Counted from the first letter of the stretch, positions 1,251 through 42,724 are shown. The stretch is DNA of 64,000 bases from IMGVR_UViG_3300044846_005229:215340-279339, one strand, 5' to 3'. Numbers and translations are program-made. The notes: a model not told the origin generated them from the sequence alone.

Positions 1251-2744
1251 TCAAGAGAGCAACCGACTCCTGATATTAGCCAGACTGTTTACATCTTCGC
1301 CATATACGCGACCGTCCAGGAAAACCGTTTTTAATTCCCCTAGTCCTTCCTGCTCATGGGTTTGCTGCTCATGGAGGACAAAGTCATCTCCTTCTTTTTC
1401 AACGCGGAGTAAACCCTTGGCCGATTTTTTCGTTCCAGAGTCAGTGATTGGATCCTTAAAAATTTCTACACCTTGACCATCAACTTGACCCCAAGTGGAT
1501 TTGAAAGCCATGCCAAAAGTATCGCGAGTGTGATATTGATAGGAATAAGATCCTACACCAAGAACAACGTTGCTGCTGGCCCACTTGTTACGGTTCATAT
1601 TTTCCAAGATAGAAAAAGCCCGTTGCAAGGTAATGGAATCACCGTAAATCAGACCAACCCTCGGATTAATTTCCCTGAAGCCACTTTCATTCACGGTGCC
1701 GCCAAACTCATCCCAAAGCAATTGCAGAGATCCCTTATGGGCAGGGCTGCCAGGTTCGGCATCAGGATTACCGCAAAGGATATGTTCGGGGTTACCGCTA
1801 TCACCCCTGAGTACAACCTTAGCAAGTCCCATAGCGTCCGGTTGACGGCTTAAGATAACATCCTTAAGTTGAACAGCAATTTTAGTCAAGACATTCCAGT
1901 AATCCCAAGTGTCACTAACAATACTGACGATACCACTGGGGTACCTGTCTTGAATAAGGCGCCGGTAAGTTTCCAACTCATTATCTTTACCGCCAATGCA
2001 CATTACACTGTGCTCAGTAGCAGGGACACCGCCCGCGATAAACTCAGAGCCAACATCATAGTAGTCTTCTAGGAAGTCGATCGAGGGGATATTGTCCGAA
2101 CCTGTAAACGAGAAAAGATGACCAATACCATGGGCAGCCCCATCATGAATTCCACCAACACCCCTCAACGAAAAGTCGTGCGCCTGGAAATTAACAAAGC
2201 TGGGGTCAGCTCCCGTCAATGCAGCATAACGATCTAGCAAACGACGAAACTCGTAAGCAACGGTAGCGATATTGACTGTTTTCCAAATTTCCGACGAAAG
2301 GGCAGTTTCCACGTAGTTAGTCAACCAGTAGAATTCGTGAATAGTATTCTGGATCGTCAAAAATGGTACTCTCAAATTGACTCGGCTTCCCTCAGGCAAA
2401 GCTTTAACCCTAAGGGGCATATAGCCGAGGTCATGTAAATCAGCCAGGTGATCTACTCCAACCGCCCCTGGGCCGAGGGCCGAATCCATACGCCTACGGT
2501 ACTTTTCAAGTACTTGATCCTTTGGTTTATTGAAAAAGGAGTCATTCCACAAGTCTTGAAGATACCATTTAAGAGTGCCTTGAATCCCTGCCACTACGAT
2601 TTTATGATCGAAATCCGGTAGCATCTTAGCCAGACGGTCAGATCTAGCGGTTTGATTGGTGTATACGATTTCGGTTTTGTCAGGGTATTGGTAGATATGC
2701 CCAGTCTTGTAAAAGTCGGTTGCGTGGGGGGCAAAAAGTTTCAT
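1251..2744 (-). CDS. nadV: nicotinamide phosphoribosyltransferase-family protein (NAMPT-like; probable Namat of NARP1)
   Basis: TDFYKTGH, HDFSLRG, PATEHSVM, SIVSDTWD, RGDSG, GLIYGDSIT, KDPITDSGTKKSAKG motifs; adjacent to Prs-like gene. Confidence 0.93.
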   Translation of the reverse strand: MKLFAPHATDFYKTGHIYQYPDKTEIVYTNQTARSDRLAKMLPDFDHKIVVAGIQGTLKWYLQDLWNDSFFNKPKDQVLEKYRRRMDSALGPGAVGVDHLADLHDLGYMPLRVKALPEGSRVNLRVPFLTIQNTIHEFYWLTNYVETALSSEIWKTVNIATVAYEFRRLLDRYAALTGADPSFVNFQAHDFSLRGVGGIHDGAAHGIGHLFSFTGSDNIPSIDFLEDYYDVGSEFIAGGVPATEHSVMCIGGKDNELETYRRLIQDRYPSGIVSIVSDTWDYWNVLTKIAVQLKDVILSRQPDAMGLAKVVLRGDSGNPEHILCGNPDAEPGSPAHKGSLQLLWDEFGGTVNESGFREINPRVGLIYGDSITLQRAFSILENMNRNKWASSNVVLGVGSYSYQYHTRDTFGMAFKSTWGQVDGQGVEIFKDPITDSGTKKSAKGLLRVEKEGDDFVLHEQQTHEQEGLGELKTVFLDGRVYGEDVNSLANIRSRLLS

Positions 2745-2809: not shown

Positions 2810-3730
2810 CTAGTTCACCCTGAGACAAGTCAAGTTGGCGGGTAGTTCCCGATAAAAGTCTCGATTCGGCAACATGTTCGCCACATAGAAGTGATCGATA
2901 AGGCCATCAAAAACCTCAAAACCCTTCGAGAAGATTCCATGGGTGATATACAAGTCGATGCGGGATGGCTCGTATTTTTTCAGAACCTTGGCAAGTTCAA
3001 TAAAGGTCCGACCACCATCGCAAATATCGTCAACAATAAGAAGGTTCTTCCCTTTGTAATCGCCGTCTTGGATCTCCGTTCGCAGGATTTCCCCATTTTC
3101 AGGGTTACGGACCTTAGTGGCATACTTGACTTCAGTAGACCCTCTAAATCTAGCAGCTACTTCCGCCCGTGGCACTGCGCCTTTATCAGGGGCAATGATT
3201 ACGGTGGTGGGGTCCCACTCCATGCCTGAAGGTATCAATTCAAACTTACTCAAAAGGGAATCAACCTGATCGTTAACAAAGTTGGTGAATTCCCCAAAGA
3301 TGCCCTCAGCTATAGGGCTATGAACATCCCACGTTGCCAAGAGGTCGCACTCGCCCAAATACGGCCTGAGGGAATTAGCAAACACCGACAGGGAGAAAGC
3401 TTCGCCTTCAGCACAAACTCTATCCTGGCGGCTATAGGGGAGATAGGGGATAAAAAGTTCCAACTTCCAAGGCTTGGGGAGCCCATCCCTCACTCTTTTA
3501 ATCGCATCCAAAATAAGCAAAAGTTTCACCCATTCTTCGCCTTTGCCGTCGATGTCAGCAGTGACGAAGATTTCGGAGTATTCAGACAGACTATCAAGGT
3601 TAACTCCGTCTAAGATTCTAACTTGATGCTCTCCAGCCGAGAAAGTGAAGGTTGAGTAATTGATCTCTGTAGGAGGTTTCCCCTCGATTAGATCCCTCGT
3701 TAGATTGGTTGCAGTTATGTTGATTGTCAT
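2810..3730 (-). CDS. prs: ribose-phosphate pyrophosphokinase-family protein (probable Adps of NARP1)
   Basis: FSAGE, PYLPYSRQDR, DVHS, APDKGA, IVDDICDGGRTF (PRPP loop), THGIFS. Confidence 0.92.
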   Translation of the reverse strand: MTINITATNLTRDLIEGKPPTEINYSTFTFSAGEHQVRILDGVNLDSLSEYSEIFVTADIDGKGEEWVKLLLILDAIKRVRDGLPKPWKLELFIPYLPYSRQDRVCAEGEAFSLSVFANSLRPYLGECDLLATWDVHSPIAEGIFGEFTNFVNDQVDSLLSKFELIPSGMEWDPTTVIIAPDKGAVPRAEVAARFRGSTEVKYATKVRNPENGEILRTEIQDGDYKGKNLLIVDDICDGGRTFIELAKVLKKYEPSRIDLYITHGIFSKGFEVFDGLIDHFYVANMLPNRDFYRELPANLTCLRVN

Positions 3731-10174: not shown

Positions 10175-10555
10175 TCAGTCCCAGTCCCCATCCAAACGTC
10201 TGCTAACCCTCCCCGCAGTTTCAGCAGCGTCTTCAATTTGGTTTCTTAAACTGATTATAATTTTGGCAATGTTCGTGTAAATCGTTACTTCATTATAACT
10301 AAGGTTGTCAAAACCGCATTCGTATTCATCATTCTCTTCAATTCCAGACCCATCAAAAAATTCTCTGAGAACCTTGTGGGTATTCCACTTATCCAGGAAC
10401 TTGTAGTAATCTTTATCCAGGAACTTGTAGTAATCTTCTCCCTTTTGGAAATCACTCCAAGCTAGACCACTGTAGTCTGGGGGACCGCACTCTGATAGGA
10501 TTTTCTTAACTTTCTTCTTTCCGGAAGAGGTCAATAATTTAGGGTCGATTTCCAT
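10175..10555 (-). CDS. hypothetical protein with internal 24-nt tandem duplication
   Basis: DYYKFLDK repeated twice. Confidence 0.7.
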   Translation of the reverse strand: MEIDPKLLTSSGKKKVKKILSECGPPDYSGLAWSDFQKGEDYYKFLDKDYYKFLDKWNTHKVLREFFDGSGIEENDEYECGFDNLSYNEVTIYTNIAKIIISLRNQIEDAAETAGRVSRRLDGDWD

Positions 10556-10579
10556 TTTTCTATTAGTGTTTGGGGTAGC

Positions 10580-10805
10580 AAGGGGACCGAAGCCCCCCGC
10601 AATGAGTCAGAATGCTATCGCTCAAACGGCGACGGCAGTCCTCTCGAATTTGACGATTTTGTTAGCGTCTATGTTGTGCTTATGCAAGCGGCTTTCGGTA
10701 ATTGGCTTGCTGTCGGTCGATTCCAGAGCGGACCCTCGAAAGGGAAATGGATCCGGGGCGATTCGAACGCCCGTGTCGCGCAGTAGTGACAACTACCTAC
10801 ACCCA
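10580..10805 (-). ncRNA. ssrA: circularly permuted (two-piece) tmRNA
   Basis: 3' acceptor/T-arm GGGCGTTCGAATCGCCCCGGATCCA (to 10748) precedes 5' acceptor GGGTCCG (10735); G3:U70 pair; tag frame 10666-10622 reads ANKIVKFERTAVAV*. Confidence 0.92.
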
Positions 10806-11323
10806 GTTTTTAGCCGTATGGTAGGGCTTTAACAATTATTACCCGTTACAGTTAAAAGTCGATGTAATCTCATACTGCCTAAGTAAGTTAAACAACTCAG
10901 TTTGAAGGTCTTCGAAGCCGCCCACAAGTTGATCCTGAGTGACCGCATAGCAAGGACCCACTTTAGAGCCAGCCCAAGGTATGATTTGTTTGTGCTCTAG
11001 AATCTTGTTCCTGTACTTAAGAAGTAGGGAGTTAATCCCGGAGGCTAGCTGAACTTTATCGGATAGAACTATTTGTTTTAACATGGTGGGGGGGGTGTTG
11101 GTTACGGTGAGGGGTGGCAATAAAAGGTGATGTTGCAGGAGGGGTTGGGTCCGGGCATCGCCTGCGGCGCCCGTCCCTGGTCGGGGGCTAACGCCCCCTC
11201 CCGAAATTTTCGGGCCATACCCCTATTGTAGCGCGTTTACTAGGGGAGGCAAGGCGGCTAACCCCCCCACAACCCAGCAAGCTGCCTGGAGTCCACCCAT
11301 TTAACATATATGGCTAGGCAGGT

Positions 11324-13760: not shown

Positions 13761-14885
13761 CTAGCAATGATAGTGATAGAATTTTTCTATGGTATCACCA
13801 CACAAATAGTTGATTAATTCGTCATCAATCGTGTTTGGTAAAACGCACTCATTTTTCATTACGTGGTCGGCTTCGTCAAATAGTCGGTTTACAATAGAAA
13901 TAAGTTCGCTATAGGTGACCCTACCATACTTAATATCAAGAAGGAACTCTGCGTCACCGACCAATTTTCTATCTACGAATAACTTACCGGCCCGCATCCC
14001 TTCAATAGCCATTTTCATAAGCCTCACGCAATGACTAGCATTCTTACCATCATACCCACAAGCCCGTTCAATTTCAGATCGCTTGACATTTCTATTCGTC
14101 AACCAATCTTGATAGTTGCCCCATCTTTTTAGGTCTGCCCGGTATTGCTGACTGGAATGAAGCAAGGCCATGTATTCATCACTTGCCCTTGTGATTTTTT
14201 GTGTTTCGTCAAAGCATTGCGTTGGCAGAACACTCTGTTTCAGAATACCTTTCCAATCAATCTGGTTGTTAAGTAGCTCATACAGCTCTGTTGAGGGTTG
14301 ATAGTATTCAATTCTATCTTTAATCAACAGATACAAATACTCAATAAACGACTCGATCTGCGACGGTGTTAAGCTCGGTGAAGGAACTCCGTAGTCTTCC
14401 CACTCTGGTTTCCTTGTTGGTGGATCCCGCAGCCATTTACGGTGAGTTTCCATCTTTTTGATTTGAGACTTTGCATACTGGACAAATGTGCCAGAGATTC
14501 TTTTGGAGATTAGTTTTGTTCGATTGTTGATCAGGGACTGCCCAAGGTAATCAAGGTAGATATAGCTATCGGGGGTCTGCCAAAGCATCTCCAGGATGTT
14601 GGGGTTTTGCGACCGTAACAGGCTGAGGTATCGCCTGATGCCATAAACTACTGAGTCGGAATTGTCTAATTCAGGAAATCTTGTCCTAAAAGTTGGTTCC
14701 CCGTCATGCACCCACCCTTTATCCTTTTGCTCAAATGTTTCTAATGTAGTATAAAATCTCCTTGGTGCAACACAGATACCTTTAAAGTCAAGGTCTGACA
14801 TTTCAGTATTTAGGCCATAGGCGTGACTACCTGACTTACAGAATAGAATCATTCCATCTTCAATTTCCTTTCGTGTAATTGTCAT
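13761..14885 (-). CDS. predicted nucleotidyltransferase (Pol-beta superfamily, RlaP/YcgL-like)
   Basis: GSHAYGLNT..SDLDFKG, NPNILEML, GYDGKNASH.VRL. Confidence 0.88.
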   Translation of the reverse strand: MTITRKEIEDGMILFCKSGSHAYGLNTEMSDLDFKGICVAPRRFYTTLETFEQKDKGWVHDGEPTFRTRFPELDNSDSVVYGIRRYLSLLRSQNPNILEMLWQTPDSYIYLDYLGQSLINNRTKLISKRISGTFVQYAKSQIKKMETHRKWLRDPPTRKPEWEDYGVPSPSLTPSQIESFIEYLYLLIKDRIEYYQPSTELYELLNNQIDWKGILKQSVLPTQCFDETQKITRASDEYMALLHSSQQYRADLKRWGNYQDWLTNRNVKRSEIERACGYDGKNASHCVRLMKMAIEGMRAGKLFVDRKLVGDAEFLLDIKYGRVTYSELISIVNRLFDEADHVMKNECVLPNTIDDELINYLCGDTIEKFYHYHC

Positions 14886-15924
14886 TTTGAGGGGGAGTCT
14901 CGTTAAGCAGGATCGTTAGCTTCTAGGAGGTACTCTGATCGGATCAAGTGCTCGTCAACTTCGTAACAAGAAAGGATAGTAATTTTGTCGTGAGGTCCAT
15001 CAGAGCCAAACTCTTCTTGTACTGCAGCCCTCAGAGCATTTACAAAGGAGTCTAAACAGTCTAAATTTCCGCAAACTCCGGTATTTGTCCTGAGGCACTG
15101 GATTTCGATGGTGGCCCTATAACGTTTGATTCTCGATGCTTCGACTGAAGCAATGTCAGCTTTTAGTTTCCGAATTTGGAGGTCGGTTAGTTGAGCTAGA
15201 TCAATCAATTCCATTGGGTTTTCACTTTTTTGTGTAATTGTCATTTTTCGTGTAATTGGTTTTAAGGTTTACCCCTTGAATGAAGAACATGACAGTAAAA
15301 CAACTAGTCATAAACCACCTGAAAAGTTCTGTGGAGTGCCCCATTTTCAACGCTTGTGAGTATGTCCCTAGAAGGAAGCAACCCGCGCCGTAAAACAACA
15401 AGCTCAAGGTACTAGGCATAGCGCCAATTTGATTTATTTAAAGGCAAAATGTAAATCATTGGGTCCATTCTCTCAAGTCCACAATTTCATACCAATCATA
15501 TTCCCGATTGGGGTCTTTGCTATCGCTAATGGTATAACATATTTTATTGCTTTTTAGGTGACCCTTCATTTTACCTGAGTTGAAGAATGTCGGATAGTCA
15601 ATATAATTAATTTTTTCTCGGGCTTCTGCCACTGATTCGTAGCACTTTATCCAATCCTGATCTCCGGCTGACGGGTAAAGGTTGTCTCCAGCAATCAGCA
15701 AATAGGGTCTATTCATAGTAACACCAAATCTTCAGGGCAGCAAGATTGGGATGTGGTCCCAGCCCAGCCCAGCCTCGATACTGCTTTGTCAAACTTTACA
15801 AATACGTTTTTGCCATTATTGGATGATACGGTGCCATGTTCAACGTCAGGGTGGTTGATTTCCCCGTGGGCGTGCCCCGGAATATAAGCCACTTTGACTC
15901 CGGGTGTTGCAAGTTTGATGTCAA

Positions 15925-19932: not shown

Positions 19933-20031
19933 CGGGGATCACACCCTGGTGGCACTATGGTGGGAGTCCGTGTAAATGGTTTCCATTGCAGGTTTTTTCG
20001 TACGCGGGGGCAATGCGTGTGGTGTCATGAC

Positions 20032-20115
20032 TATCGTAGGTTGTTTGCTTCCGGGTGTGGGTGCGGATTCCCGTACAAAAAGGTTCGGTAATTACACCAT
20101 CGGGAGCCGAAGTCA
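20032..20115. repeat. intergenic promoter-cassette repeat, copy 1
   Basis: near-identical to 32765-32859 and 33231-33325. Confidence 0.9.
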
Positions 20116-20922
20116 ATCAGAAGCGAAGGGTCTCTTCACCGGGTTGCATCGTTTGCGGTGGGGCGGTCATCGTCTGGGCCGAATCGGTCATCGCAGGTAA
20201 TAGCAAGGCGCCCAGTAACCGGGGCTTGACCCAGATCGAGCCGGAATCCATACCCAGCGAGGCAATTGGATTGGCGTTGACGCTGGTGTGGGTTGATAGG
20301 TGTATTGGCTGCTCATGGCTATGCCCCCTCGGCATGGGGCAGCGGGATAGCGTGGGCGGTAATGAACCGCGCCTGAGCATTGTTCCATCGGCATATTGCG
20401 CGATGAACCGTTCCGCATTCCTTAGTTGAAGTGTGGCCGTTGTCACAATAAACCCGCCACATATCACGAAAATCCCAATCAAGAACCTTACCTTTTGCAT
20501 TACACCTTGCACAATTAGCTATTGCCGGGGTGTGTACTTTCTGCTTCACGCTTCCACCTCCCCGGCCTGGGGCGTCAGGATAGAGAGAGTACTTACATGC
20601 TCGTTCCATGCAGCTCGCAGATAATCTTTGTATACCTGGTAAGGGACACCCTTTTTAGAGCACGCTTCGATTACACTCTCTGCTTTTACGCCAGGGCCCC
20701 ATCTGTGTTGACAGCGACATTTAGCATAGTTACCATTATTAAAGACCCAAGTACGTGGAAACTCTCCGCAATTAGGGCATAGATCCCACCCGGCTGTGGA
20801 TTTAAGAGGTTCGTACCATTCGCCACAGCTGTCTTCCCACCTGTAGGTTTCAGTCATTGCCTGTGCGGTAGAGGTTGAATGTCGGTCAGTCATTTGGTTG
20901 GTTTTATCGCTAATAGGATTTA

Positions 20923-25402: not shown

Positions 25403-26625
25403 GTTTGTTTTAGGGGTTACAAGGTTTGTCAGAAAAGGTTTAATGCCATCGCCTGGGCCCAATACAGGATCAGGGTCTAAAGGGCAATTATGACGTTGAG
25501 TTTATTACCAGTGGGGACATCAAAATAAATTTCAAAGTCCGGGGAGTGTTTAGTTGCCATTTCCCCAAAGCTCTTCATAAGTTTGCTTGATGGTGTCTTC
25601 CTTATTAAGTGGGTGATTGTCACTCCATTCGCCAATTTCTTTTGATTGAATAGACATTATCTTTGGGTAGAGGTGCCTTATGTTTTCAATGAAATACACA
25701 ATATCATCTTCAGGCATGTCCTCAAAACCCAATACTAAAACTTCAACTTTGTATGCTTTCATTGTCCCCCGGTTGCTTCGAAACACCCCTGATCGTAACC
25801 TTCGTCGTACATTTCTTGGGCAAATTTTAGAAGTCCATGGAGGAGCTTAGATTTTACGACGAATGACGATGGTTCAATTCTTACTAGGTCACCCATGCCA
25901 TCTATAGCTGACCCCTTTCTGATAAAGTTGAAGTGTTGACTAGCAATCTCAAAAATTTGTTCGTCAGTCATTATCGAAATAGTGTAGGTTGGTTTGGGGG
26001 GGGGGGGGGGGGGTTCCCCATGTAGCTATGGTACTCTAATCGATGGGCCAGGTAAAGGCCGGTTAACCGCCCTACCCGTCAAACTCTGAAAGTTCTTTCT
26101 TAGCGGCTTCCTTCCCAAGCAATCTCCTTTCTTTTTTATGCAAGACCTTTCCATGAGAACAAAGTTTGCATCGTGGGTTTCCGCAATCGAGTGGGTCTTT
26201 GCTATAGACCTTGCCAAAAGTGATGCAATCAGGGTTAATGCCGTTATTCAAACTACCTAGCAATCTTAACCATTTATTCCTCAAACGTTCCGCATGGTGG
26301 CGTCTTCGGGCTGACTTTGCCATTTTGGTTCTAGGGCCCTGGACAATTGATTAAACTACTGGGGCTATGGACGAAGAGGACCAGCTCGTCCTGATCCAAG
26401 TAACCAGCCACCAATAAGACTAAAAAAATGTGCCAAAAAAATGTGTCAGGGAAAGGTCCTGGAATTGCGAAGCCAATGGAGACTAAAAGGGTTGCGACAG
26501 TGAGTAGAATGTAAGGGTTAGGCATTGGGTTTTGTAGAGGGGTGATCCGATGCCATTATAGGGCAAGTTTTCCCTGGGGAAACGGTCGGTTTTCCGAACC
26601 CATGGTTAAAACTCCGAAGCCAAAA

Positions 26626-26707
26626 TACCGAATGTCGGACTCGAACCGACACGCCTTGCGGCAATCGCTTTTGAGGCGGCCATGACTACCAATTCCATCA
26701 ATTCGGC
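26626..26707 (-). tRNA. trnL: tRNA-Leu(CAA)
   Basis: cloverleaf with long variable arm, loop CT-CAA-AA, GTTCGAGTC T-loop. Confidence 0.88.
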
Positions 26708-26835
26708 ATTTGCCCTGAGTAGCCAGCTCAAGGACTTTTTGGATGTTTGAACCGTCGCTCATTTCACCCTCCATTTTGATATGGGAGATGGGCTCCTTTA
26801 AGGAGTTAACTCCCGAGCAAGTTACTGATTGCTCA

Positions 26836-26949
26836 CCGATAGAATTTTGCTAACCTAAGTTAACAATGCACAGGTATTAATACCTGAGGGGCTATCTCCC
26901 AAAGTCTCAAGAATTCTTGAGACGCTTTTTACCCAGATATTCCGGGCAC
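26836..26949. repeat. 114-bp exact repeat, copy 1
   Basis: identical to 42372-42485. Confidence 0.95.
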
Positions 26950-26986
26950 ACCGTCTCTTTTTGGCTGGCCCAGAGAAGACGGGCTA

Positions 26987-27067
26987 TGGGGGCAGGGGGA
27001 CTCGAACCCCCACGGCCGAAGCCAGAAGTTTTTAAGACTTCCGTGTCTACCATTCCACCATGCTCCC
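26987..27067 (-). tRNA. trnL: tRNA-Leu(TAA)
   Basis: GAAGT-CT-TAA-AA-ACTTC, long variable arm. Confidence 0.92.
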
Positions 27068-27424
27068 TTGTGTGCCCCATCATAGCACCCCTTGGGTAAA
27101 AGTCGGGGCCTTTGGGGTTAGTTCGTGGCTAAATCCGAAGATGAACTAAACCCAAAGCAAACCCCTAGCCAATCAACCAATACTCAAGTAAGCCCTAGCC
27201 TCTACAATTTCCAAGCCATCCCCACCAAAGGTAAACGAAGTTTGGACTCCCCTGTGATTTGAAAATGGGCTAGAGATTGTCACCGTTAGGGAATTAGGGT
27301 TATCTAACTCCCCATAGGAAACTCTGCCCAGGGTCAACCAGTTAGATTGGAATCTATTGATGATAGACTCTTTTGAAAGTCGTGGGTATTGGAATTGCAT
27401 TTGTTTGCTAAGGCTGCCCCTAAA

Positions 27425-27868
27425 TCAGGCAGTGAGTACACATGGGGTAGATTTACCCAACTTGCTGAAATTGGCTGTTGTCACTAGTTTTACTGATTGA
27501 CTGCCGGACATCTTGGCATCCGATTGAGCACCAGCCAGCAATTTCATTTGCTTGAGGGTAGCCAGCATTTCGGTAGCTTCCTTGGCGCCATCACGGTTGG
27601 CGATAGCAAGTTTGGAATGGTTTTTGCGGGCAGAGCCATAATCACTCCCATATTGCGCCCACCAAGCATCTTGCTGCTCGATGTCCCAATCATAGGAAAA
27701 CACAGGCACATCAGAGACGGCGTGTTGGTTGGTGCGGATTTGATTTTTGCGGTTGCGTTGGCCCTGGCTGAGTTGGCTGTAGGCTTGTTTCCAGTCGGCA
27801 ATGGCTTGAAGGTAGGTTTCCTTAGTAGTGAAGGCGGTGAAGGTGGTGAATGCGGCTAGAGTTGTCAT
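27425..27868 (-). CDS. hypothetical protein
   Basis: 147 aa ORF behind promoter-like sequence. Confidence 0.7.
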   Translation of the reverse strand: MTTLAAFTTFTAFTTKETYLQAIADWKQAYSQLSQGQRNRKNQIRTNQHAVSDVPVFSYDWDIEQQDAWWAQYGSDYGSARKNHSKLAIANRDGAKEATEMLATLKQMKLLAGAQSDAKMSGSQSVKLVTTANFSKLGKSTPCVLTA

Positions 27869-27963
27869 TGTTTTTGTTGTGTGTGTGTGTTTCGGTGTGG
27901 GCTATCGACCGAGTTAGTGTAAGATGGGCCCGTGGTCGGGGCAATACGGTAAACCGACCAGGT

Positions 27964-28518
27964 TCATTTAGGGTGGGTGTCTGCTGATCTAAAACCCACT
28001 TGAGTGGGCCTGCTGTTCGGACCCTTGAACGGCACATTAACTCTGTGATCCACTATCGTTACCGGTGAATCTAAACTCAAAGTGTTACCCCCCAGATTAA
28101 TTCTTTTCACTTGGACATACTCTGCAACTTTTTGCAGATCTTCAAGTACCGCGCCACCGTTGGCCACGACCATGTCAGCAACTGCCATCAGGCTCCGGTA
28201 CTGCTTATCGTCAAACTTTAAGCCGTTGGCTTCTTTGAGAATACACAGAATAACTTTTTCTGGCCTTTTATTACTATCATCTACTACCTCAGCAATAGAG
28301 TAAAACCCTTTTATTTCAGGCGTAATGACATAGAGGCAAAAATCGCAATTTTTTCTTTGCTCAATTTCCTCAAGCCGTGCCCTGTCTGTCCATTCTTCGA
28401 CTACGGGGTTAAAATATCCCAGCAGCCGCTGCTCCAGTAGGATTATAAGTTCTTCGCGCCAAGTGGATCCATTACAAGTGCCCCCAAGGAACACTTTTGT
28501 TTGATTGTCTGAAGTCAT
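27964..28518 (-). CDS. nucleoside 2-deoxyribosyltransferase-like protein
   Basis: KVFLGGTCNGSTWRE, YFNPVVEEW, LYVITP..KGFYSIAEVVDDSNKRP. Confidence 0.8.
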   Translation of the reverse strand: MTSDNQTKVFLGGTCNGSTWREELIILLEQRLLGYFNPVVEEWTDRARLEEIEQRKNCDFCLYVITPEIKGFYSIAEVVDDSNKRPEKVILCILKEANGLKFDDKQYRSLMAVADMVVANGGAVLEDLQKVAEYVQVKRINLGGNTLSLDSPVTIVDHRVNVPFKGPNSRPTQVGFRSADTHPK

Positions 28519-28627
28519 TTTGCTGGTGTTTGTATGTTGGTGAACTTGCTGTTAAAGCTGTGTTTGTTACGAGCCTATTGTAGCTTAAAGGGGGAGCTGA
28601 GTCAAGGGGGAGGCCAAACCCCGACCA

Positions 28628-29860
28628 TCACTCAATCCAATGGGGGACCACTCGGCTTGTGTCAAGGACAATCGGCCGGTCATGATCCCTAATGATGATG
28701 CCTGCGGGTTCATTACCGACAACCCAAGACCCGATGACTGCCCGATTGTCGCCGTCCTGGAAAAGATCGGCTTTTTTCTGGTAGATGCGGGGTCCATCAT
28801 ACATGCCAGTAGTTCTAGAGGTTACCACACCTGACTCAACAATGTCAATGTTGGCCCCTTCCCGGCTCAGCATAGGCTTTACCACGTAGGATGTGGGATT
28901 TAGTTTTCCGGATGAAAACGCCTCTAATTGTTCTGGTGTTCCATGCTCCCGGAGATTCAGCCAATCCCAATCATCCACCGGGATGCCACCCTCAGTGAAA
29001 CTGGCTGGAAGGATGTTAGGGTGGTCTGGAAACATCTCATGGAGAATAGGCAAGATGCCCTTATTGCTCAGGATTGATTTCCAGATTGGCTCTACAATTC
29101 CAGAGGAACCTTTAATAGTGTGTAATCCAAACTCATCTCCCATCATCCATTCCCATGGGTATAGCTTGAACCAATACTTAATCGGATTCTCTTGGATGTC
29201 AGTGAAGTTTTCTCCATTCCAGCCAATGTCCCCCAAATCAATAAAATCTGTAGTTAACCCAGCCTGAGTAGCTAAATCTTGGAAGTAAACCAGGGTCTGA
29301 TACTCCTCTAGGCTTTCAGAATAACCTGCAAATACAAACTTGTGGCCGAACGGTACCCTTTGCCTGATTTCCTTGAATTGGTCAATAAGTTTTTCATGCA
29401 AAGAGTTGAATTGGTCTTTTCCGGGCTTAACATCCTGCAACCAGAACCATTGCATTAGCGCCGATTCAATAACCATTGTAGGAGTGTCTGCATTGTATTC
29501 CAACATCTTAGGTTGGCTGTCCCCCGTATATGCAAAGTCAAACCTGCCATATAAAGATGGGTCGCATTGCTTCCAGGATTTGGAAATCGCGGAGTGGTAT
29601 GCTGAGGGAATTCCGATTTTTGCCATTAACTCTGAATCACCCACAACCTTGTCCACAGCATCGAGGCACCGGAGTTGGCATTCCCGTGTGGCATCTTCAA
29701 GTTCGTCAATTTCAGCCATAGAAAACTCATAGGCCACAGATTCATCCCAATAGGTTCCCTCCCCATCTTTTGATGAGGTACCCGATGTGTGGTAGGTGAA
29801 CCCAATCTCTTCAGCTTTTTCTTGCCAATTAACGCGAGGTTGTAGGGTGTGACGTTTCAT
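28628..29860 (-). CDS. glutathionylspermidine synthase-family ATP-grasp ligase (YgiC-like)
   Basis: YWDES, LYGRFDFAY, KMLEYNADTPT, DQFNSLHE, FKLYPWEW, EPIWKSILSNK, KPMLSREGAN, IGSWVV. Confidence 0.93.
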   Translation of the reverse strand: MKRHTLQPRVNWQEKAEEIGFTYHTSGTSSKDGEGTYWDESVAYEFSMAEIDELEDATRECQLRCLDAVDKVVGDSELMAKIGIPSAYHSAISKSWKQCDPSLYGRFDFAYTGDSQPKMLEYNADTPTMVIESALMQWFWLQDVKPGKDQFNSLHEKLIDQFKEIRQRVPFGHKFVFAGYSESLEEYQTLVYFQDLATQAGLTTDFIDLGDIGWNGENFTDIQENPIKYWFKLYPWEWMMGDEFGLHTIKGSSGIVEPIWKSILSNKGILPILHEMFPDHPNILPASFTEGGIPVDDWDWLNLREHGTPEQLEAFSSGKLNPTSYVVKPMLSREGANIDIVESGVVTSRTTGMYDGPRIYQKKADLFQDGDNRAVIGSWVVGNEPAGIIIRDHDRPIVLDTSRVVPHWIE

Positions 29861-29944
29861 TTTGCTGTTTGGGTTGGCGGGTTGGTGCCCGGTATGATAA
29901 TTTGGGAGTCTACCCAGCCACTATAGCACAGCTTAACCCTGCAA

Positions 29945-30709
29945 TCAACTCCCACTGCCAAACCCTCGACCGCCCCCACCGAATCCGCTCCGGGCAGATG
30001 CTGACCGAGACGACGTAAACGATGAGCGTCCATAACCTCCCACAGAGCCCCTAATCGATGCACTACGGGCAGATGGCACATAGTTGCTGCTTAAGGCCAA
30101 AGATCGCCCACTAGATGGGTTGGCGCGAATGTAGGAGGTTCGCATTCCTTCCGTCAGGGAATTGGATCTGATTCCGGAGAACCCATACGAGTAATAATAA
30201 GGAGTCGGATACCAACCGCCAAGAACAACAACTGAGGTTCGATCATAATCGTCGTCCTGATTATCAAAGACCGATGGCCCCGCAACTACGGCTCGCTCCT
30301 TAAGCTCATCAGCAGTAAGGGGCCGCTCGTTGATATAGCCTTCTTCATCTTCGTATTCTGCTGTTTTTTGATCGTAGCCTTGGAGATATACAGGGCGACT
30401 ATTCGCCATGAAACCAACCATTTTAGGCAACCAAACTGTGGCACCGTCTAAAGTTACTTCGGAACATTCCTGATGACCTGCCGTCTTGCAATTAGCAGTG
30501 CTGGGGTAGCGAGGTGCCTTGAGCAGGTGGCTAAATGCTGCCCGATCATAATGCTGCTTGCAATCTTTGGTTCCAAACTTTTCACATTCTTCTATAGTTG
30601 AAAAAATCTTCTGACCTTCCAAGCTGGGTTGGGGTTTGGAGCAAGCTGTCAATGTGATGGCCGTCATGGATGCAATGAGGACCAAAGAGATGGATTGTGT
30701 GTGTTTCAT
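29945..30709 (-). CDS. DUF1190/YgiB-like lipoprotein
   Basis: lipobox LTAC, Cys pattern, APRY, W.PKMVGF, C-terminal RSGFGGGG; upstream of GSP synthase. Confidence 0.8.
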   Translation of the reverse strand: MKHTQSISLVLIASMTAITLTACSKPQPSLEGQKIFSTIEECEKFGTKDCKQHYDRAAFSHLLKAPRYPSTANCKTAGHQECSEVTLDGATVWLPKMVGFMANSRPVYLQGYDQKTAEYEDEEGYINERPLTADELKERAVVAGPSVFDNQDDDYDRTSVVVLGGWYPTPYYYSYGFSGIRSNSLTEGMRTSYIRANPSSGRSLALSSNYVPSARSASIRGSVGGYGRSSFTSSRSASARSGFGGGGRGFGSGS

Positions 30710-32279
30710 TGGTGGTGTTTGGACTTTGTATGTATGGTAAGGCCTATAGGGGGTTTAGAAACCCATTGAAGTTAGGCGCTAAACCAGCAAGTACCACCAT
30801 GGCGAAACTCAGCTTGAATCTGCTTGTAGGTGCAGCGTTTATTGTCCGCAGGACTAACCCTTGACAACCCTTCAGGAAGCTCCGTATACTCGGAGAGAAG
30901 TTTGACTTCAATGTCTTTGGTACTAATGTCAGGAATCATCTTGGTTTTAATGTCAGGAATTGCTTTTTGGACAAGCTTTTTTTAAAGCCATGATGGCGGA
31001 AAGGGTGTTTCGAACTTCAGTCGGGGTTCTGCACCACCCTAAAGCATTGGAAACTTGTTTGCGGCTGGAGCATAACTCTTCGGCCCAAAATCTAAACAGT
31101 TCGGCATCTTTGTCATCGTTGGGGGCATCCATATTTAGTCTTTGTGTCCTGAATCTGCATTCCGCTCAAAACCCGAAGCAATAGATCTGATATAACTTTG
31201 AGTCTTCTCAGTCACACCAAAATTACAGATGTTTGGAGGGGCACCTGCCGCCCAGCGTGCAATCAGTTCGTCTTCCAATTCCGGGGTGTGGCGTGAGCGG
31301 GTACGCAAGTACCAAACATCATGAGCACAATTCACGGAAACACCAAGTTCGGTTGCTAGGTCTCTCATGTATTGCTCCAACTCCTCGTAGTATTCGTTGA
31401 GAATGTCCTCGTCAAATACGGTGGAAGCTTCGTTGGAGATTTGCTCAGGTGTCATTTTGCGGTTGGGTGATGATTGGTTAGCTGAAGGTATCGTATTGGT
31501 TTTGGCCTAAAGGGTCAAGGTTCGGGAACCCCGCCTTCAACATTGTTTGGCGTACTTTCCTTCGGTATGAACTTTGGTTTTGATTCCAGAATAGACGGGC
31601 ATATAGATTTGTCCACCGATGAAACCCAATCTAAAATAGTTCCTAACTAGAAAATTTTCAAAGTTTGTTTCTGTTAGGGACGTAACTTGGTGCATTGTTT
31701 CCAAGGTGCTGCATTGGGTTTGAAGCCGTGTGTTTTGGCACCGGAGTTCCTGGTTAAGGTCGTCCCAATTCAAAAGATAAGGTTTCGTGTGCTTCATGAC
31801 TGATTGCCACGGGAGATTCTCGCAAGGATTGCCTTACCGATTTATTGCCAAATAGTTAAGGGTTTCGGTGGCTAGGGTACCCATTGGTTTTGGGCTTTGC
31901 AGTTCCAGTCAAAATTTTGATAAGGGGGGAGGTTAACTTCTATGCAATAGGCCCCGCAAAGGTTGCAAAACCTCCATTTATCTTGTAATTCTCGGGAGCT
32001 AAAGTCACCAGGGGTGCTGTGGCCGCATGTAGAGCAGTTTTTGATTGGGAGTTCGCTCATTGTTCTTAGTGTGGGGAATCGAATGCGGGACTTTGATTGG
32101 CCCTGATGGTCTGTGGCGGGGTAAATTCTTAGCGCCTTAACTTAGCTACTATAGGTTGTTTTCTCCGGGGTTACCAGGGCGGTTATCCCTACTAAAAGGG
32201 ACGGTAATTACACCATCGGAAGGGGGGAGCACCCTGCCGCATGGGGGACGAACCCTGTGCATCATCACCGATAAGGCAA

Positions 32280-32738
32280 TCAAAGCCCTAGAAGTTTACG
32301 ATCTTCGGGGTCGAGTTTTGAAAGGGCAGCTTGTCGTTTACGGTGGTTTTCTTCTACTTCAAGACGAGAGCGTCTAATGTACTCAATCACTGAGAAGGCA
32401 TTATCGATTTCGTATACTAAATTACAGTAGTCAGAGTAAGAGTAGCTATCTTGATACAACGCAAGATTAAGGCTGTTACCTGAGAGGCTGAAGTTTGAAT
32501 TATGGATGGTAAGTTTGAATATATTGGGTTCCGGTTGTTTTAGGGTATAATCAATGACCTCTTTATCTAGTTCTGAGAGCAAATTAAGGATAATACCAGG
32601 AAAAGCATGGAAGTAGGAATCCATTTCCTTCTTTTGAATCTGAGCAGCGGCGGCCTTTAATTCAGCTTCTTTTTCCAGACGTTGCTGCTTGCGGAGAGCT
32701 TTTTCTTCGTCGGATAGTGGTTGCTTGGGGCTTGGCAT
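32280..32738 (-). CDS. hypothetical protein (ALSKLDPEDRKLLGL-tail family)
   Basis: shares C-terminal motif with 33322 and 33742 ORFs. Confidence 0.75.
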   Translation of the reverse strand: MPSPKQPLSDEEKALRKQQRLEKEAELKAAAAQIQKKEMDSYFHAFPGIILNLLSELDKEVIDYTLKQPEPNIFKLTIHNSNFSLSGNSLNLALYQDSYSYSDYCNLVYEIDNAFSVIEYIRRSRLEVEENHRKRQAALSKLDPEDRKLLGL

Positions 32739-32764
32739 AGTCTGCTTAGGGTTTGGGGTCGGGG

Positions 32765-32859
32765 GTGTTGGTGCTATTATAGGTCGTTTACTTTCGGGTG
32801 TGGGTGCGGATTCCCGTACAAAAAGGTTCGGTAATTACACCATCGGGAGCCGAAGTCAA
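32765..32859. repeat. intergenic promoter-cassette repeat, copy 2
   Basis: runs from stop codon of upstream gene to TATAAT box. Confidence 0.92.
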
Positions 32860-33209
32860 AACCCTGGTAGGCCACATTCCTTAAGCCAACCATCATACCA
32901 AATCTGAGCCGAACCACGGATCACTTCGTCAACCATGTCCGTCAGGATCCACTCTTGGCTTGAATGAAATGGTGCGCTTCTTAGATGCACATACCGGTGA
33001 CCTGCCCAGTAGTCTAGAAACGTCCGGTCTTCGTTCGGGAAGATATCAAAAAGTAGCTGACTCATGAGCGGACGCTTATCGATGCCTCGACTCATTTTGT
33101 CAAGCGTAACTTTGACGGCCGCTAGTTGGTCTTTGGTAAGGGTGTTTTTCGGGATTGCATCAAGGTTGACTTTTCCGGTAGGGGTCGTTGCTAGTGGATG
33201 ATAAGGCAT
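32856..33209 (-). CDS. hypothetical protein flanked by direct repeats
   Basis: 117 aa ORF between repeat copies 2 and 3. Confidence 0.75.
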   Translation of the reverse strand: MPYHPLATTPTGKVNLDAIPKNTLTKDQLAAVKVTLDKMSRGIDKRPLMSQLLFDIFPNEDRTFLDYWAGHRYVHLRSAPFHSSQEWILTDMVDEVIRGSAQIWYDGWLKECGLPGF

Positions 33210-33230
33210 TGGCTCGGGGGTATGACGGGA

Positions 33231-33325
33231 GTGTTGGTACTATTATAGGTCGTTTACTTTCGGGTGTGGGTGTGGATTCCCGTACTTTTAGGTTCGGTAA
33301 TTACGCCATCGGGAGCCGAAGTCAA
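33231..33325. repeat. intergenic promoter-cassette repeat, copy 3
   Basis: near-identical to 32765-32859. Confidence 0.92.
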
Positions 33326-33690
33326 CGAATCCCAAGTGCGTCCCTTTGCTCAGGAGTCAACGCTTCCTTTGCTACCCTCCTTGCTTCCGCCTTAACTTTT
33401 TCCGCTTCCTTTTGTTTTCGGTGGCTTTCACGCCGCTTCTCATATTCCTCGTCGGTCTCCTCTCTAATTTTGTAATACTTAGTTTCACACATTGCGTACT
33501 CATGGCCGTAGTCGTTATCGATCCACTTTTCGCTATCTATGTGGGTGAAACCCTCGTTTAAGATATCTTGAAGATACGCAATAACTGCTGAAATTTCCCT
33601 ACTGAAAACATCAGTGGCATTATCCGTGTATTGCTCTTTTTTAGACTGCATTTTGTAGTCAGTTACAGTTAGCCTTTTGAGTTTTGCCAT
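33322..33690 (-). CDS. hypothetical protein, paralog of 33742-34101
   Basis: EGFTHID...REETDEEY...LTPEQRDALGI. Confidence 0.8.
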   Translation of the reverse strand: MAKLKRLTVTDYKMQSKKEQYTDNATDVFSREISAVIAYLQDILNEGFTHIDSEKWIDNDYGHEYAMCETKYYKIREETDEEYEKRRESHRKQKEAEKVKAEARRVAKEALTPEQRDALGIR

Positions 33691-33741
33691 TTTGCCTTTG
33701 TTTTTGTTTTCAAAAGAACTTTAAAGGAATGCCATAACAGA

Positions 33742-34101
33742 TTATTGACTAATACCCAAAGCCTCTCTTTGCTCCTGAGATAGTCCCGCAATAGTCACCC
33801 TCCGTCTTTCCGCTTTTTCTTCCCTTTCTAATTCAACTTTCAGTCGTGCCTGATACTCTGCGTCAGTTTCCTCTCTTTCTTTGAAATAGGAAAGATAAGC
33901 TGTACCGAGTCCATCCCATCCAGAGATGTCTACGTCTAAGGTCGTAAAACCTTCATCTATGAGAGACTCGATATAGTCCGCAAGTTCCCTTAGGTTTCTA
34001 GGGAGGTACCTCAAGTCATCTTCAAGTTTTTCTTGTCTGTGGATGTTGTGGGTGAATAACCCTAACTTGTATTCTTTAATTAGTTTCTTTGTTTTTTCCA
34101 T
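33742..34101 (-). CDS. hypothetical protein, paralog of 33322-33690
   Basis: EGFTTLD...REETDAEY...LSQEQREALGI. Confidence 0.8.
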   Translation of the reverse strand: MEKTKKLIKEYKLGLFTHNIHRQEKLEDDLRYLPRNLRELADYIESLIDEGFTTLDVDISGWDGLGTAYLSYFKEREETDAEYQARLKVELEREEKAERRRVTIAGLSQEQREALGISQ

Positions 34102-34319
34102 TTTGGTTTAGTGATTTGTTGTGTAGGGAGCCTATCCCTTTGTGTCCCAACCAGTGTAAAGCACCCTGTACATGACTTAATGGGAACCTAGTGGCATGCA
34201 ACTTTAAGCAACCAAATGGAATGGACGATGCCAAACACAAATGCCACGCCAATTAGTCCACTGACCCAACCAACTCTGCGCCCATGTTCGTGAATTTTGG
34301 TGTCCGCTGGGGTTGGCAA

Positions 34320-34574
34320 TTAGCATCTCATGATGGGACCATTTTGTGGGGGCCTTTGAGCAGGGTTTGTTGGCGGGACAGGCACTGAAGACCCTGAGTG
34401 AATCTCATTCAAGGCACCCTGAGCCTCAGGACCCCCAAAGCTCGGGTCAATCTCATGGTAGAAAACCATGTTGAGGTGGTTGCGGATAACTTGGATTTGG
34501 TCCGGAGTAAGAGATTCAGGGTTCCCAAGTTCAAAGAGCCCTTGTAGCCAATAGCAAAAGTTGCGGGATGTCAT
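34320..34574 (-). CDS. FCxWLQG-family small protein
   Basis: MTSRNFCYWLQGLFE...GPIMRC*. Confidence 0.8.
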   Translation of the reverse strand: MTSRNFCYWLQGLFELGNPESLTPDQIQVIRNHLNMVFYHEIDPSFGGPEAQGALNEIHSGSSVPVPPTNPAQRPPQNGPIMRC

Positions 34575-34590
34575 TTTGGTTGCGGGAAGG

Positions 34591-35069: not shown

Positions 35070-35120
35070 TGTCGTGTTTAGATTGAGTGTGAATTTCAAT
35101 AGGATTATATTCGGGTCCAG

Positions 35121-35312: not shown

Positions 35313-35332
35313 TTTGTGAGTGGGGAGTGAAA

Positions 35333-38763: not shown

Positions 38764-38773
38764 AAGCGTTTCC

Positions 38774-42723: not shown

Positions 42724-42724
42724 A

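What the first reader, a model, noticed from the sequence alone, without database searches (positions are those of the whole stretch)
10580..10805. Circularly permuted, compact two-piece tmRNA carried by a phage
Seen: the T-arm and 3' acceptor strand come before the 5' acceptor strand, separated by a 12-nt spacer. It has the G3:U70 alanine identity pair, inter-piece pairing (GGTAGTT/AATTACC), tag ANKIVKFERTAVAV* and a downstream hairpin, in only about 220 nt. Established: permuted tmRNAs occur in picocyanobacteria and alpha-proteobacteria, and cyanobacterial tags begin AN(N/K)IV.F. The tag ends AV rather than the usual AA, which may alter proteolysis (inference).
Basis: partly seen in the sequence, partly recalled or inferred. 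Interest (0 to 1): 0.75.

Follow-up and report, generated by a model that had tools for sequence, protein, structure and literature searches.

The report
Cyanophage two-piece tmRNA, altered tag
A 279-kb freshwater cyanophage carries its own split ("two-piece") ribosome-rescue RNA (tmRNA); such RNAs are already known in phages, but this one writes a conserved tag that lacks the host's usual Ala-Ala ending, as do most cyanophage tmRNAs examined here.

Summary
On the minus strand, window 10804-10582 encodes a circularly permuted tmRNA. It scores 72.8 bits against Rfam cyano_tmRNA (cut-off 70) and 56.1 bits against tmRNA_permuted (cut-off 47).

The genome is a complete 279-kb virus record with terminal repeats, 22 tRNAs and an hli gene, so it is a cyanophage. 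It encodes no SmpB.

At least 14 syntenic IMG/VR contigs, all relatives, carry the same gene:
- 19 base pairs show compensatory changes.
- G3:U70 and A73 never vary.
- The tag frame shows 9 synonymous and 4 amino-acid variants.
- The tag always ends VAV (AVAI in one metagenome contig).

All 26 sampled host picocyanobacteria encode 16-residue tags ending VAA. By contrast, 19 of 21 distinct cyanophage-type tags do not end in AA, while 58 of 64 other phage tmRNA tags do.

The tRNA-like domain is only 47% identical between close relatives, whose flanks are 87-95% and mRNA-like domains 93% identical.

Phage-borne permuted tmRNAs are already catalogued, S-CBWM1 among them. This is therefore a new variant, and its subgroup is invisible to ARAGORN. 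Processing, charging and tagging remain untested, and the metatranscriptome support is weak.

The parts
10835..10862 (-). Sigma-70-like promoter candidate (TCGACT, 16-nt gap, AATAAT) upstream of the gene.
   Evidence: There was 1 site against 0.6 expected by chance, so it is not significant. The sequence is conserved in the nearest relatives.
10800..10824 (-). Conserved 25-nt element directly 5' of P2. It could be a leader, a promoter -10-like WAAACU, or the 5' end of the acceptor piece.
   Evidence: It is 76-96% identical across the family, S-CBWM1 included. Its role is unknown.
10748..10799 (-). Acceptor piece: P2 3' strand (10797-10777), NNAC linker, T-arm (10772-10756), 3' acceptor strand CGGAUCC (10755-10749), discriminator A (10748). 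CCA is not encoded.
10736..10747 (-). 12-nt intervening spacer, removed if the precursor is processed at tRNA-like ends.
   Evidence: Spacer length ranges from 6 to 86 nt among relatives.
10582..10735 (-). Coding piece (154 nt): 5' acceptor strand GGGUCCG, D-loop analogue, P2 5' strand, PK1-position hairpin, tag frame, stop-codon hairpin, terminal hairpin.
   Evidence: A 155-nt contig from an RNA library covers 10583-10737.
10678..10689 (-). Hairpin GCUU/GCAU/AAGC at the position of host pseudoknot PK1.
   Evidence: It is invariant in the family. No clear second pseudoknot stem was found.
10622..10666 (-). Tag reading frame: resume codon GCU (10666-10664), then ANKIVKFERTAVAV, then stop UGA (10624-10622). 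The upstream context AUAGAC has U at -5 and A at -4.
   Evidence: ARAGORN reads the same tag in relatives.
10604..10645 (-). Hairpin that holds the last tag codons and the stop codon. Its core is 10637-10613 and its loop is CGUUUGA.
   Evidence: The pair at alignment columns 273:285 occurs as U:A, C:G, A:U and G:C.
10582..10598 (-). Terminal GC-rich hairpin with a UUCG loop. It marks the 3' end of the coding piece, and no U-tract follows it.

Best explanation
This is a functional, phage-encoded, circularly permuted tmRNA gene of the picocyanobacterial type. It lies in an uncultivated ~279-kb freshwater cyanophage.

Inferred pathway, each step following what is established for bacterial two-piece tmRNAs:
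1. One precursor is transcribed from the minus strand.
2. Host tRNA-processing enzymes cut it at the tRNA-like ends. RNase P cuts at G1 (10735). 3' trimming plus CCA addition follows A73 (10748).
3. This yields an acceptor piece of ~52-57 nt and a coding piece of 154 nt, held together by the acceptor stem and the P2 helices.
4. Host AlaRS charges it through G3:U70/A73.
5. Host SmpB and EF-Tu deliver it to ribosomes stalled on broken mRNAs in the infected cell.
6. Translation resumes at GCU and adds ANKIVKFERTAVAV.

The phage-specific part concerns the tag. It is two residues shorter than the host tag and ends in Val instead of Ala-Ala. Rescued products are therefore probably marked with a weaker or differently addressed degron. 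Ribosome recycling would be kept while the fate of tagged proteins changes.

Shown here:
- gene anatomy;
- family conservation and covariation;
- coding constraint on the tag;
- phage and cyanophage context;
- the difference from host tags.

Inferred: processing, charging, tagging, and the effect on proteolysis.
For: Model and sequence evidence:
- Two Rfam models score above their gathering cut-offs.
- Every defining element can be read directly from the sequence.

Family evidence:
- 14 IMG/VR contigs and 16 metagenome contigs (some of them the same contigs) hold the gene at the same syntenic locus of related phages.
- All relatives scanned exceed the RF04321 cut-off, scoring 55.8-84.1 bits.

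Structure:
- RNAalifold on 12 members recovers the T-arm, acceptor stem, P2, stop hairpin and terminal hairpin.
- 19 of 53 pairs are kept through double changes, and the G3:U70 wobble is present in 12 of 12.
- Acceptor stems differ between subgroups (GGGUCCG, GGGGCUA, GGGGGUG, GGGGCUG), always with matching 3' strands and A73.
- Covariation also occurs inside the window's own subgroup, between the window and L150.

Tag frame:
- It shows 9 synonymous codon variants against 4 conservative amino-acid variants.
- The final GUU-UGA is invariant, with one AVAI variant.

Comparison with hosts and other phages:
- 26 of 26 sampled hosts have tags ending VAA.
- 19 of 21 distinct cyanophage-type tags do not end AA, against 58 of 64 other phage tags that do.
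- In Synechocystis, ssrA-type tags ending in Val (AAV, ASV) lower protein levels less than LVA does (PMC2860132).

Context:
- The genome is a complete virus record with hli, 22 tRNAs and no integrase.
- A 155-nt contig from an RNA library matches the predicted coding piece to within 2 nt at both ends.
Against: - ARAGORN does not call this subgroup.
- The cyano_tmRNA score is only 2.8 bits above its cut-off.
- The window's TLD is the most divergent of the family. It has U4:A69 instead of G4:C69, and P2a is reduced to 2+3 bp around an internal loop.
- No second stem for pseudoknot PK1 is evident.
- No U-tract terminator was found.
- Single-sequence folding is no better than shuffles, z = -0.87.
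- The phage has no SmpB, so function depends on the host protein accepting a diverged TLD.
- RNA-library depth over the gene matches that of neighbouring genes and of the DNA libraries from the same samples. Transcription and processing are therefore not demonstrated.
- The last four codons sit in a conserved hairpin, so part of the tag's conservation may be RNA-level.
Confidence: 0.8

Rival explanations
1. The RNA acts mainly as a competitor or decoy. It binds host SmpB (and AlaRS/EF-Tu) and so damps or hijacks host trans-translation rather than supplying rescue capacity. The TLD-only tmRNA relic of mycobacteriophage DS6A was reported to inhibit tmRNA in this way.
For: - The phage has no SmpB and must share the host's.
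- The TLD is diverged.
- There is precedent in DS6A (PMC4131195).
Against: - A pure decoy needs no tag frame. Here the frame, the resume context and the stop hairpin are the most conserved part, and the frame carries synonymous changes.
- G3:U70/A73 and the T-arm are kept through compensatory changes.
Confidence: 0.08
2. The gene is a decaying copy of a host tmRNA gene, picked up by the phage and no longer functional.
For: - Borderline cyano_tmRNA score.
- ARAGORN is negative.
- One 3' hairpin is missing and P2a is weakened.
Against: - The gene is kept at a syntenic locus in phages whose flanks have diverged to 65-95% identity.
- 19 base pairs are compensated.
- The tag is under coding constraint.
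- No sampled host has this TLD or this tag.
Confidence: 0.03
3. It is an attachment-site remnant: a temperate phage that integrates into the host ssrA gene carries a fragment of that gene.
For: tmRNA genes are common integration sites (PMC4383910, listed; also my own knowledge).
Against: - The gene is complete, with both pieces.
- It is strongly diverged from host genes.
- The 279-kb genome has no integrase.
- The record has direct terminal repeats.
Confidence: 0.01
4. It is a chance match or an assembly artefact, such as a host fragment chimerically joined to a phage contig.
For: None beyond the low score margin.
Against: - The same gene sits in the same gene neighbourhood in many independent assemblies and sequencing runs from lakes.
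- The E-value is 1.6e-17.
- Its sequence differs from all sampled host genes.
Confidence: 0.01

Closest known systems
Two-piece (circularly permuted) tmRNA of picocyanobacteria (Synechococcus / Prochlorococcus / Cyanobium; Rfam RF01851 cyano_tmRNA)
   Same: - Same permuted order: P2 3' strand, T-arm, 3' acceptor, short spacer, 5' acceptor, D-analogue, P2 5' strand, hairpin, tag, 3' hairpins.
- G3:U70 and A73 are present.
- CCA is not encoded.
- The tag begins AN(N/K)IV.F.
- U at -5 and A at -4 lie before the resume codon.
   Different: - The host TLD is almost invariant (GGGGCUG/CAGCUCC, T-arm AGCGG/CCGCU). The phage TLD differs at most stem positions.
- The tag is 14 aa rather than 16, and ends VAV rather than VAA.
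- The stop codon lies in a hairpin loop rather than in a stem.
- One 3' hairpin, about 30 nt, is missing.
- The PK1 loop pairing is not evident.
- The gene lies in a phage genome without smpB.
Permuted tmRNAs of cultured cyanophages (S-CBWM1, S-CAM1/3, S-SSM7/S-SSM6a, S-CRM01, Sf-FS3; listed by ARAGORN in Table S1 of PMC9004378)
   Same: - They are phage-borne, cyano-type and permuted.
- S-CBWM1 shares the upstream 25-nt element and the GCUU-GCAU-AAGC hairpin with the window.
- Most have tags without a terminal AA.
   Different: - The hosts are marine, estuarine or reservoir strains, and most of the phages are T4-like Kyanoviridae. The window phage has no Gp23-type capsid gene and is a 279-kb lake phage.
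- The tags are different.
- The S-CBWM1 gene keeps the host-length 3' region and scores 123 bits.
- ARAGORN finds those genes but not the window subgroup.
Alpha-type two-piece tmRNA of marine myophages (Methylophilales phage Melnitz, pelagimyophages; PMC9004378)
   Same: A phage-encoded permuted ssrA without phage smpB, proposed to act in the infected cell.
   Different: - It is the alphaproteobacterial type (ANDxx...ALAA tags), and the AA terminus is kept in 58 of 64 such viral tags.
- Melnitz couples the gene to a glutamine riboswitch. No riboswitch was found here by Rfam.
One-piece tmRNAs of mycobacteriophages (Bxz1 group), Bacillus phage G and huge phages; TLD-only relic of phage DS6A (PMC4131195, PMC7162821)
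   Same: A phage-carried trans-translation RNA.
   Different: Those are standard, non-permuted genes. Some huge phages also carry SmpB. DS6A lacks a tag frame.

Membership tests
tmRNA (ssrA), permuted form | Covariance-model match above the curated cut-off | tested here: met
   RF01851 scores 72.8 bits against a cut-off of 70. RF04321 scores 56.1 against 47.
tmRNA (ssrA), permuted form | tRNA-like domain: 7-bp acceptor stem, 5-bp T-stem with a 7-nt T-loop, D-loop analogue GG..UCGAC | tested here: met
   Read directly from the sequence and recovered by RNAalifold with compensatory changes.
tmRNA (ssrA), permuted form | Alanine identity: G3:U70 wobble and discriminator A73 | tested here: met
   G at 10733 pairs with U at 10751, and A is at 10748. 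The U-G pair is present in 12 of 12 family members.
tmRNA (ssrA), permuted form | Circular permutation: the 3' acceptor half precedes the 5' acceptor half, separated by a short spacer | tested here: met
   12-nt spacer at 10747-10736. Hosts have spacers of 6-30 nt.
tmRNA (ssrA), permuted form | Inter-piece helix P2 joining the acceptor and coding pieces | tested here: met
   GGUAGUUG pairs with CAAUUACC, and there are further CU/AG, CUG/CAG and CG/CG pairs. Distal P2 and P2a covary. P2a is weak in the window itself.
tmRNA (ssrA), permuted form | Tag reading frame with an Ala resume codon, an in-frame stop, and a conserved upstream context | tested here: met
   GCU...UGA at 10666-10622. Synonymous variation was seen in relatives. 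U at -5 and A at -4 are as in hosts and, from my own knowledge, as in E. coli.
tmRNA (ssrA), permuted form | Pseudoknot PK1 between P2 and the resume codon | tested here: inconclusive
   Only an invariant 4-bp hairpin is seen. The host-type pairing of upstream GCC with loop GGU has no clear counterpart.
tmRNA (ssrA), permuted form | Tag ends in the C-terminal Ala-Ala degron typical of bacterial tmRNAs | tested here: not met
   The tag ends Ala-Val. This is conserved in the family, whereas 26 of 26 hosts end Ala-Ala. This is a common feature of the family, not a defining one.
tmRNA (ssrA), permuted form | Partner protein SmpB available | not testable with these tools
   There is no PF01668 match in the phage genome. 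Host SmpB would be needed, and the host is not identified.
tmRNA (ssrA), permuted form | Precursor processed into two RNAs; alanylated; tags nascent peptides | not testable with these tools
   The only hint is an RNA-library contig at 10583-10737 that matches the predicted coding piece. Depth is low and DNA carry-over is not excluded.
Cyanophage (host assignment) | Signature cyanophage gene content | tested here: met
   - hli is present: a 67-aa ORF with the EALNGRLAMIG motif, phrog_178, E 3.8e-22.
- The tmRNA is of the cyano type.
- psbA, CP12 and Gp23 are absent.
- The phage has no close cultured relative.

The most novel reading that the evidence does not exclude
Cyanophage tmRNAs may be a specialised takeover tool rather than spare copies of a host gene. 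On this reading they keep ribosome rescue running in the infected cell but write a tag that has lost the host's Ala-Ala ClpXP signal (ending in V, I, TA or CA). Rescued products would then be spared, degraded more slowly, or sent to another protease or adaptor. In the lake jumbo-phage clade the tRNA-like domain is in addition exchanged as a cassette between related phages while the tag module is frozen. That could reflect selection by host factors that recognise or attack the tRNA-like domain.
Probability: 0.3. Interest if true: 0.75.

Novelty: new variant of a known kind. Interest (0 to 1): 0.55.

Why it matters
Trans-translation is nearly universal in bacteria, and why phages carry their own tmRNA is an open question. 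Three results here make it testable.

- A whole clade of ~200-280-kb lake cyanophages keeps a two-piece tmRNA that the standard finder (ARAGORN) misses. Surveys built on that tool therefore undercount phage tmRNAs.
- The phage tag is under coding constraint yet differs from every sampled host tag at the C-terminal residues that in E. coli direct ClpXP proteolysis. The same loss of Ala-Ala recurs across cyanophage tmRNAs but not across alpha-type phage tmRNAs.
- The tRNA-like domain is the most conserved part in hosts but the most variable part here.

Together these suggest that phages separate ribosome rescue from the host's proteolysis signal. Reporter half-life assays and mass spectrometry can test that directly.

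There is also a practical point. The tmRNA genes of several cultured cyanophages are unannotated or overlaid by 'hypothetical protein' calls in GenBank.

Tried and rejected
Host tmRNAs were obtained instead by a pattern search of 401 cyanobacterial genomes.
- Cognate versus non-cognate cofolding of the P2 strands did not discriminate cleanly, because alternative pairings compete. The cofolds were used only to display the helices.
- Single-sequence folding gave z = -0.87 and is uninformative.
- The neighbouring ORFs 10175-10555 and 10839-11120 were checked as possible SmpB or adaptor analogues. They had no Pfam or PHROG family and no usable Atlas lead.
- Host or lineage assignment through DNA ligase and nucleotidyltransferase tblastn and megablast of the locus gave nothing specific. 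The helicase's best hit, Synechococcus phage B3/B23 at 48%, is a T4-like phage without a permuted tmRNA.
- The spacer insert of relatives was tested as a tRNA. ARAGORN and Rfam did not call one.
- The promoter and terminator scan found one non-significant promoter-like site and no terminator.
- The integration-remnant, pseudogene and artefact readings were rejected, as set out under the rival explanations.
- A literature search found no paper in the held library that analyses cyanophage tmRNA tags.

Full report
**1. What is there**

Read on the minus strand, window 10804-10582 has the full anatomy of a circularly permuted tmRNA gene. In order:
- a strand of helix P2, from 10797;
- a T-arm with the canonical loop UUCGAAU (10772-10756);
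- the 3' acceptor strand CGGAUCC and discriminator A (10755-10748), with no encoded CCA;
- a 12-nt spacer;
- the 5' acceptor strand GGGUCCG (10735-10729), which gives a G3:U70 wobble;
- the D-loop analogue CUCUGGAAUCGAC;
- the other P2 strand;
- a small hairpin at the position of pseudoknot PK1;
- a reading frame from GCU to UGA (10666-10622) that encodes ANKIVKFERTAVAV;
- a hairpin that holds the stop codon in its loop;
- a terminal UUCG hairpin (10598-10582).

Rfam's cyano_tmRNA model matches 10844-10582 at 72.8 bits (cut-off 70, E 1.6e-17). The general tmRNA_permuted model matches 10797-10622 at 56.1 bits (cut-off 47).

ARAGORN does not call the gene, either through the tool or as v1.2.41 run locally. 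It does call the relatives and the host genes.

**2. Where it sits**

The window is the last 64 kb of a 279,339-bp IMG/VR virus record. That record has direct terminal repeats and a CheckV completeness of 100%. It holds exactly one tmRNA.

Nearby genes are phage-like:
- a UvrD-type helicase;
- an RlaP-like nucleotidyltransferase;
- NAMPT and a PRPP-synthetase-like gene;
- a DNA ligase;
- a collagen-like tail fibre;
- a virion structural protein.

The whole genome has 22 tRNA genes. It has no SmpB, ClpP, integrase, psbA, CP12 or T4-type capsid gene.

It does encode a 67-residue high-light-inducible protein with the EALNGRLAMIG motif (phrog_178, E 3.8e-22). This is a signature gene of cyanophages. 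The DNA recurs in many lake-water metagenomes. The element therefore belongs to a freshwater jumbo cyanophage with no close cultured relative. The exact host is not known.

**3. It is a conserved family, not a one-off**

Pattern scans of IMG/VR followed by BLAST found the same gene in 14 viral contigs. A metagenome scan found it in 16 contigs, some of which are the same contigs. All lie in the same gene neighbourhood of related phages, whose flanks are 65-95% identical to the window. Two of the contigs measure 277 kb and 201 kb. All relatives scanned exceed the tmRNA_permuted cut-off.

An alignment of 12 members (A1) folded with RNAalifold independently recovers the T-arm, the acceptor stem, distal P2 and P2a, the PK1-position hairpin, the stop-codon hairpin and the terminal hairpin.
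- 19 of 53 predicted pairs are kept through changes on both sides.
- The U-G pair that corresponds to G3:U70 is present in all 12 members.
- Acceptor stems read GGGUCCG, GGGGCUA, GGGGCUG or GGGGGUG, each with the matching 3' strand and A73.
- Covariation is also seen within the window's own subgroup, between the window and L150.

**4. The tag is under coding constraint and differs from the host's**

Across 11 family members the 14 codons show 9 synonymous codon variants. There are only 4 amino-acid variants, all conservative: K3N, T10I, T10A and A11V. The last codon GUU and the stop codon never change. One metagenome contig ends AVAI.

The wobble base of Val-12 takes all four values and is matched each time by the opposite base of the stop hairpin. 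RNA structure and peptide therefore both constrain this stretch.

For comparison I took a sample of 401 cyanobacterial genomes. It gave 26 picocyanobacterial permuted tmRNAs.
- Their tRNA-like domains are almost invariant.
- All 26 encode 16-residue tags ending (P/L)VAA.
- No sampled host has the phage's tag or its tRNA-like domain.

**5. The altered terminus is general for cyanophage tmRNAs**

ARAGORN on 154 IMG/VR loci gave 116 permuted tmRNAs. I added five cultured cyanophages, whose tmRNA genes are unannotated in GenBank.
- 19 of 21 distinct cyano-type viral tags do not end in Ala-Ala. They end AV, LV, TV, TA, PA, CA or AL.
- 58 of 64 other viral tags, mostly alpha-type, do end in Ala-Ala.

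The Fisher tests are strong (3e-5 and 7e-12) but are not corrected for shared ancestry. S-CAM1 and S-CAM3 are exceptions and end VAA.

From my own knowledge, the C-terminal Ala-Ala and free carboxylate are the main ClpX determinants of the E. coli tag, and variants ending in Val (AAV, ASV) are degraded more slowly. In the cyanobacterium Synechocystis the same order was measured for reporter levels: untagged > ASV > AAV > LVA (PMC2860132). A terminal Val is thus most simply read as a weaker or re-addressed degron. This is inference.

**6. A reversed conservation pattern**

In hosts the tRNA-like domain is the constant part. In this phage family it is the variable part. The table compares the window with contig L122.

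| Region | Identity, window vs L122 |
|---|---|
| Flanking genes | 87-95% |
| 25 nt upstream of P2 | 96% |
| mRNA-like domain | 93% |
| tRNA-like domain plus P2 | 47% |

L122's domain is 95% identical to that of L143, whose flanks are in part less similar to the window (72-87%). Such a mosaic suggests that the tRNA-like module is exchanged by recombination among related phages while the tag module is held fixed. Why is unexplained. Escape from a host factor that targets the domain is one speculation.

The window subgroup has the most divergent domain: U4:A69, and a P2a of 2+3 bp around an internal loop. That is probably why ARAGORN misses it.

**7. Compactness**

From the start of P2 to the terminal hairpin the gene is 216 nt, against about 254 model positions in the host family. 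The difference comes mainly from a missing hairpin of about 30 nt after the tag, plus a shorter stop hairpin. S-CBWM1 keeps the host length. 'Compact' is correct but modest.

**8. Expression**

Two metatranscriptome runs from freshwater sediment hold the sequence.
- In one run, a 155-nt contig covers 10583-10737. The predicted coding piece is 10582-10735.
- In the other run, a 633-nt contig spans 10498-11109. It covers the gene, the small ORF upstream of it and the start of the next ORF downstream.

Depths are low. They are similar to those of neighbouring genes and to the DNA libraries from the same samples. This is compatible with a processed coding piece and a longer precursor, but it proves neither.

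**9. Comparison with what is known**

Two-piece tmRNAs are established in picocyanobacteria, Alphaproteobacteria and some Betaproteobacteria. Phage-borne tmRNAs are also on record:
- They have been listed since the mycobacteriophage Bxz1 group (PMC4131195).
- They were noted in huge phages (PMC7162821).
- A 2022 survey found 53 phage genomes with ARAGORN-called permuted tmRNAs, mostly aquatic, including S-CBWM1, S-CAM3 and S-SSM6a (PMC9004378).
- The 2025 tmRNA database holds 79 phage sequences (PMC11915505).

The kind is therefore known. What I did not find described in the held literature:
- this lake jumbo-phage clade;
- its frozen VAV tag;
- the general loss of the Ala-Ala terminus in cyanophage tags;
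- the swapping of the tRNA-like domain.

**10. Verdict**

The element is a real, conserved, phage-encoded two-piece tmRNA of cyanobacterial type.

I rate it a new variant of a known kind, with interest 0.55. My confidence that it is a functional tmRNA gene is about 0.8. The claim that its tag changes the fate of rescued proteins is a testable inference, which I put at about 0.3-0.5.

Noticed in passing
L150:7332-7413 (-) and L144:1705-1790 (-); also L138, L123 and the metagenome contigs L314, L317, L322, L324, L326: In some relatives the spacer between the tmRNA 3' acceptor end and G1 is an 82-86-nt structured insert. It folds as an acceptor-like stem, a long stem and a T-arm-like hairpin (GUGGG/UUAGAAU/CCCAC). 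The two versions differ by compensatory changes. It looks like a tRNA-like processing module, but neither ARAGORN nor Rfam calls it a tRNA.
   Followed up: partly
L122, L133, L143, L313, L318 (tmRNA T-arm): One subgroup has the non-canonical T-loop GGCAGUA (GGCAGUU in L313). Its D-loop analogue also changes, with UAG in place of UGG. This may be a co-change of the T-loop/D-loop contact.
   Followed up: no
window 10800-10824 (-): A 25-nt element directly upstream of P2 is conserved across the family and in S-CBWM1. It may be a promoter, a leader or part of the mature RNA. RNAalifold pairs its GGU with the GCC just 5' of the PK1-position hairpin.
   Followed up: partly
window 11128-11211 and 46001-46083: A GC-rich element of about 85 nt occurs as an inverted pair (89% identity). 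At 11144-11214 the metagenome and metatranscriptome contigs branch into other sequence contexts and depth rises, as expected for a repeated or mobile element.
   Followed up: partly
window 20031-20116, 32145-32222, 32760-32860, 33226-33325: Four copies of an intergenic repeat of about 86-100 nt, 74-94% identical.
   Followed up: no
window 26625-45852 (-): A cluster of 17 ARAGORN tRNA genes, all on the minus strand. Rfam adds a further weak tRNA match at 42825-42895 (36.6 bits). The whole genome has 22 Rfam tRNA matches, two of them unusually long (112 and 127 nt, outside the window).
   Followed up: no
G000:C1 about 14770-14973 (L312:1453-1656, -), outside the window: An hli gene: a 67-aa high-light-inducible protein with the EALNGRLAMIG motif. 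It marks the phage as a cyanophage even though psbA is absent.
   Followed up: yes
window 1251-2744, 2810-3730, 13761-14885, 28628-29860: Auxiliary genes: NAMPT, a PRPP-synthetase-like gene, an RlaP-like nucleotidyltransferase of the RNA-repair pathway, and glutathionylspermidine synthase. S-CBWM1 also has an NAD-salvage gene (NMNAT) about 2.6 kb from its tmRNA.
   Followed up: no
GenBank records MG450654, HQ634177, GU071098, HQ615693, PV340856, KU686199 (loci L001, L304-L308): The permuted tmRNA genes of cultured cyanophages S-CBWM1, S-CAM1, S-SSM7, S-CRM01, Sf-FS3 and S-CAM3 are unannotated or overlaid by 'hypothetical protein' CDS calls.
   Followed up: yes
window 10566-10832 (+), 10622-10792 (-), 10702-10824 (+): Mechanical ORFs of 40-88 aa overlap the tmRNA gene. 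A gene caller could mistake them for proteins.
   Followed up: no
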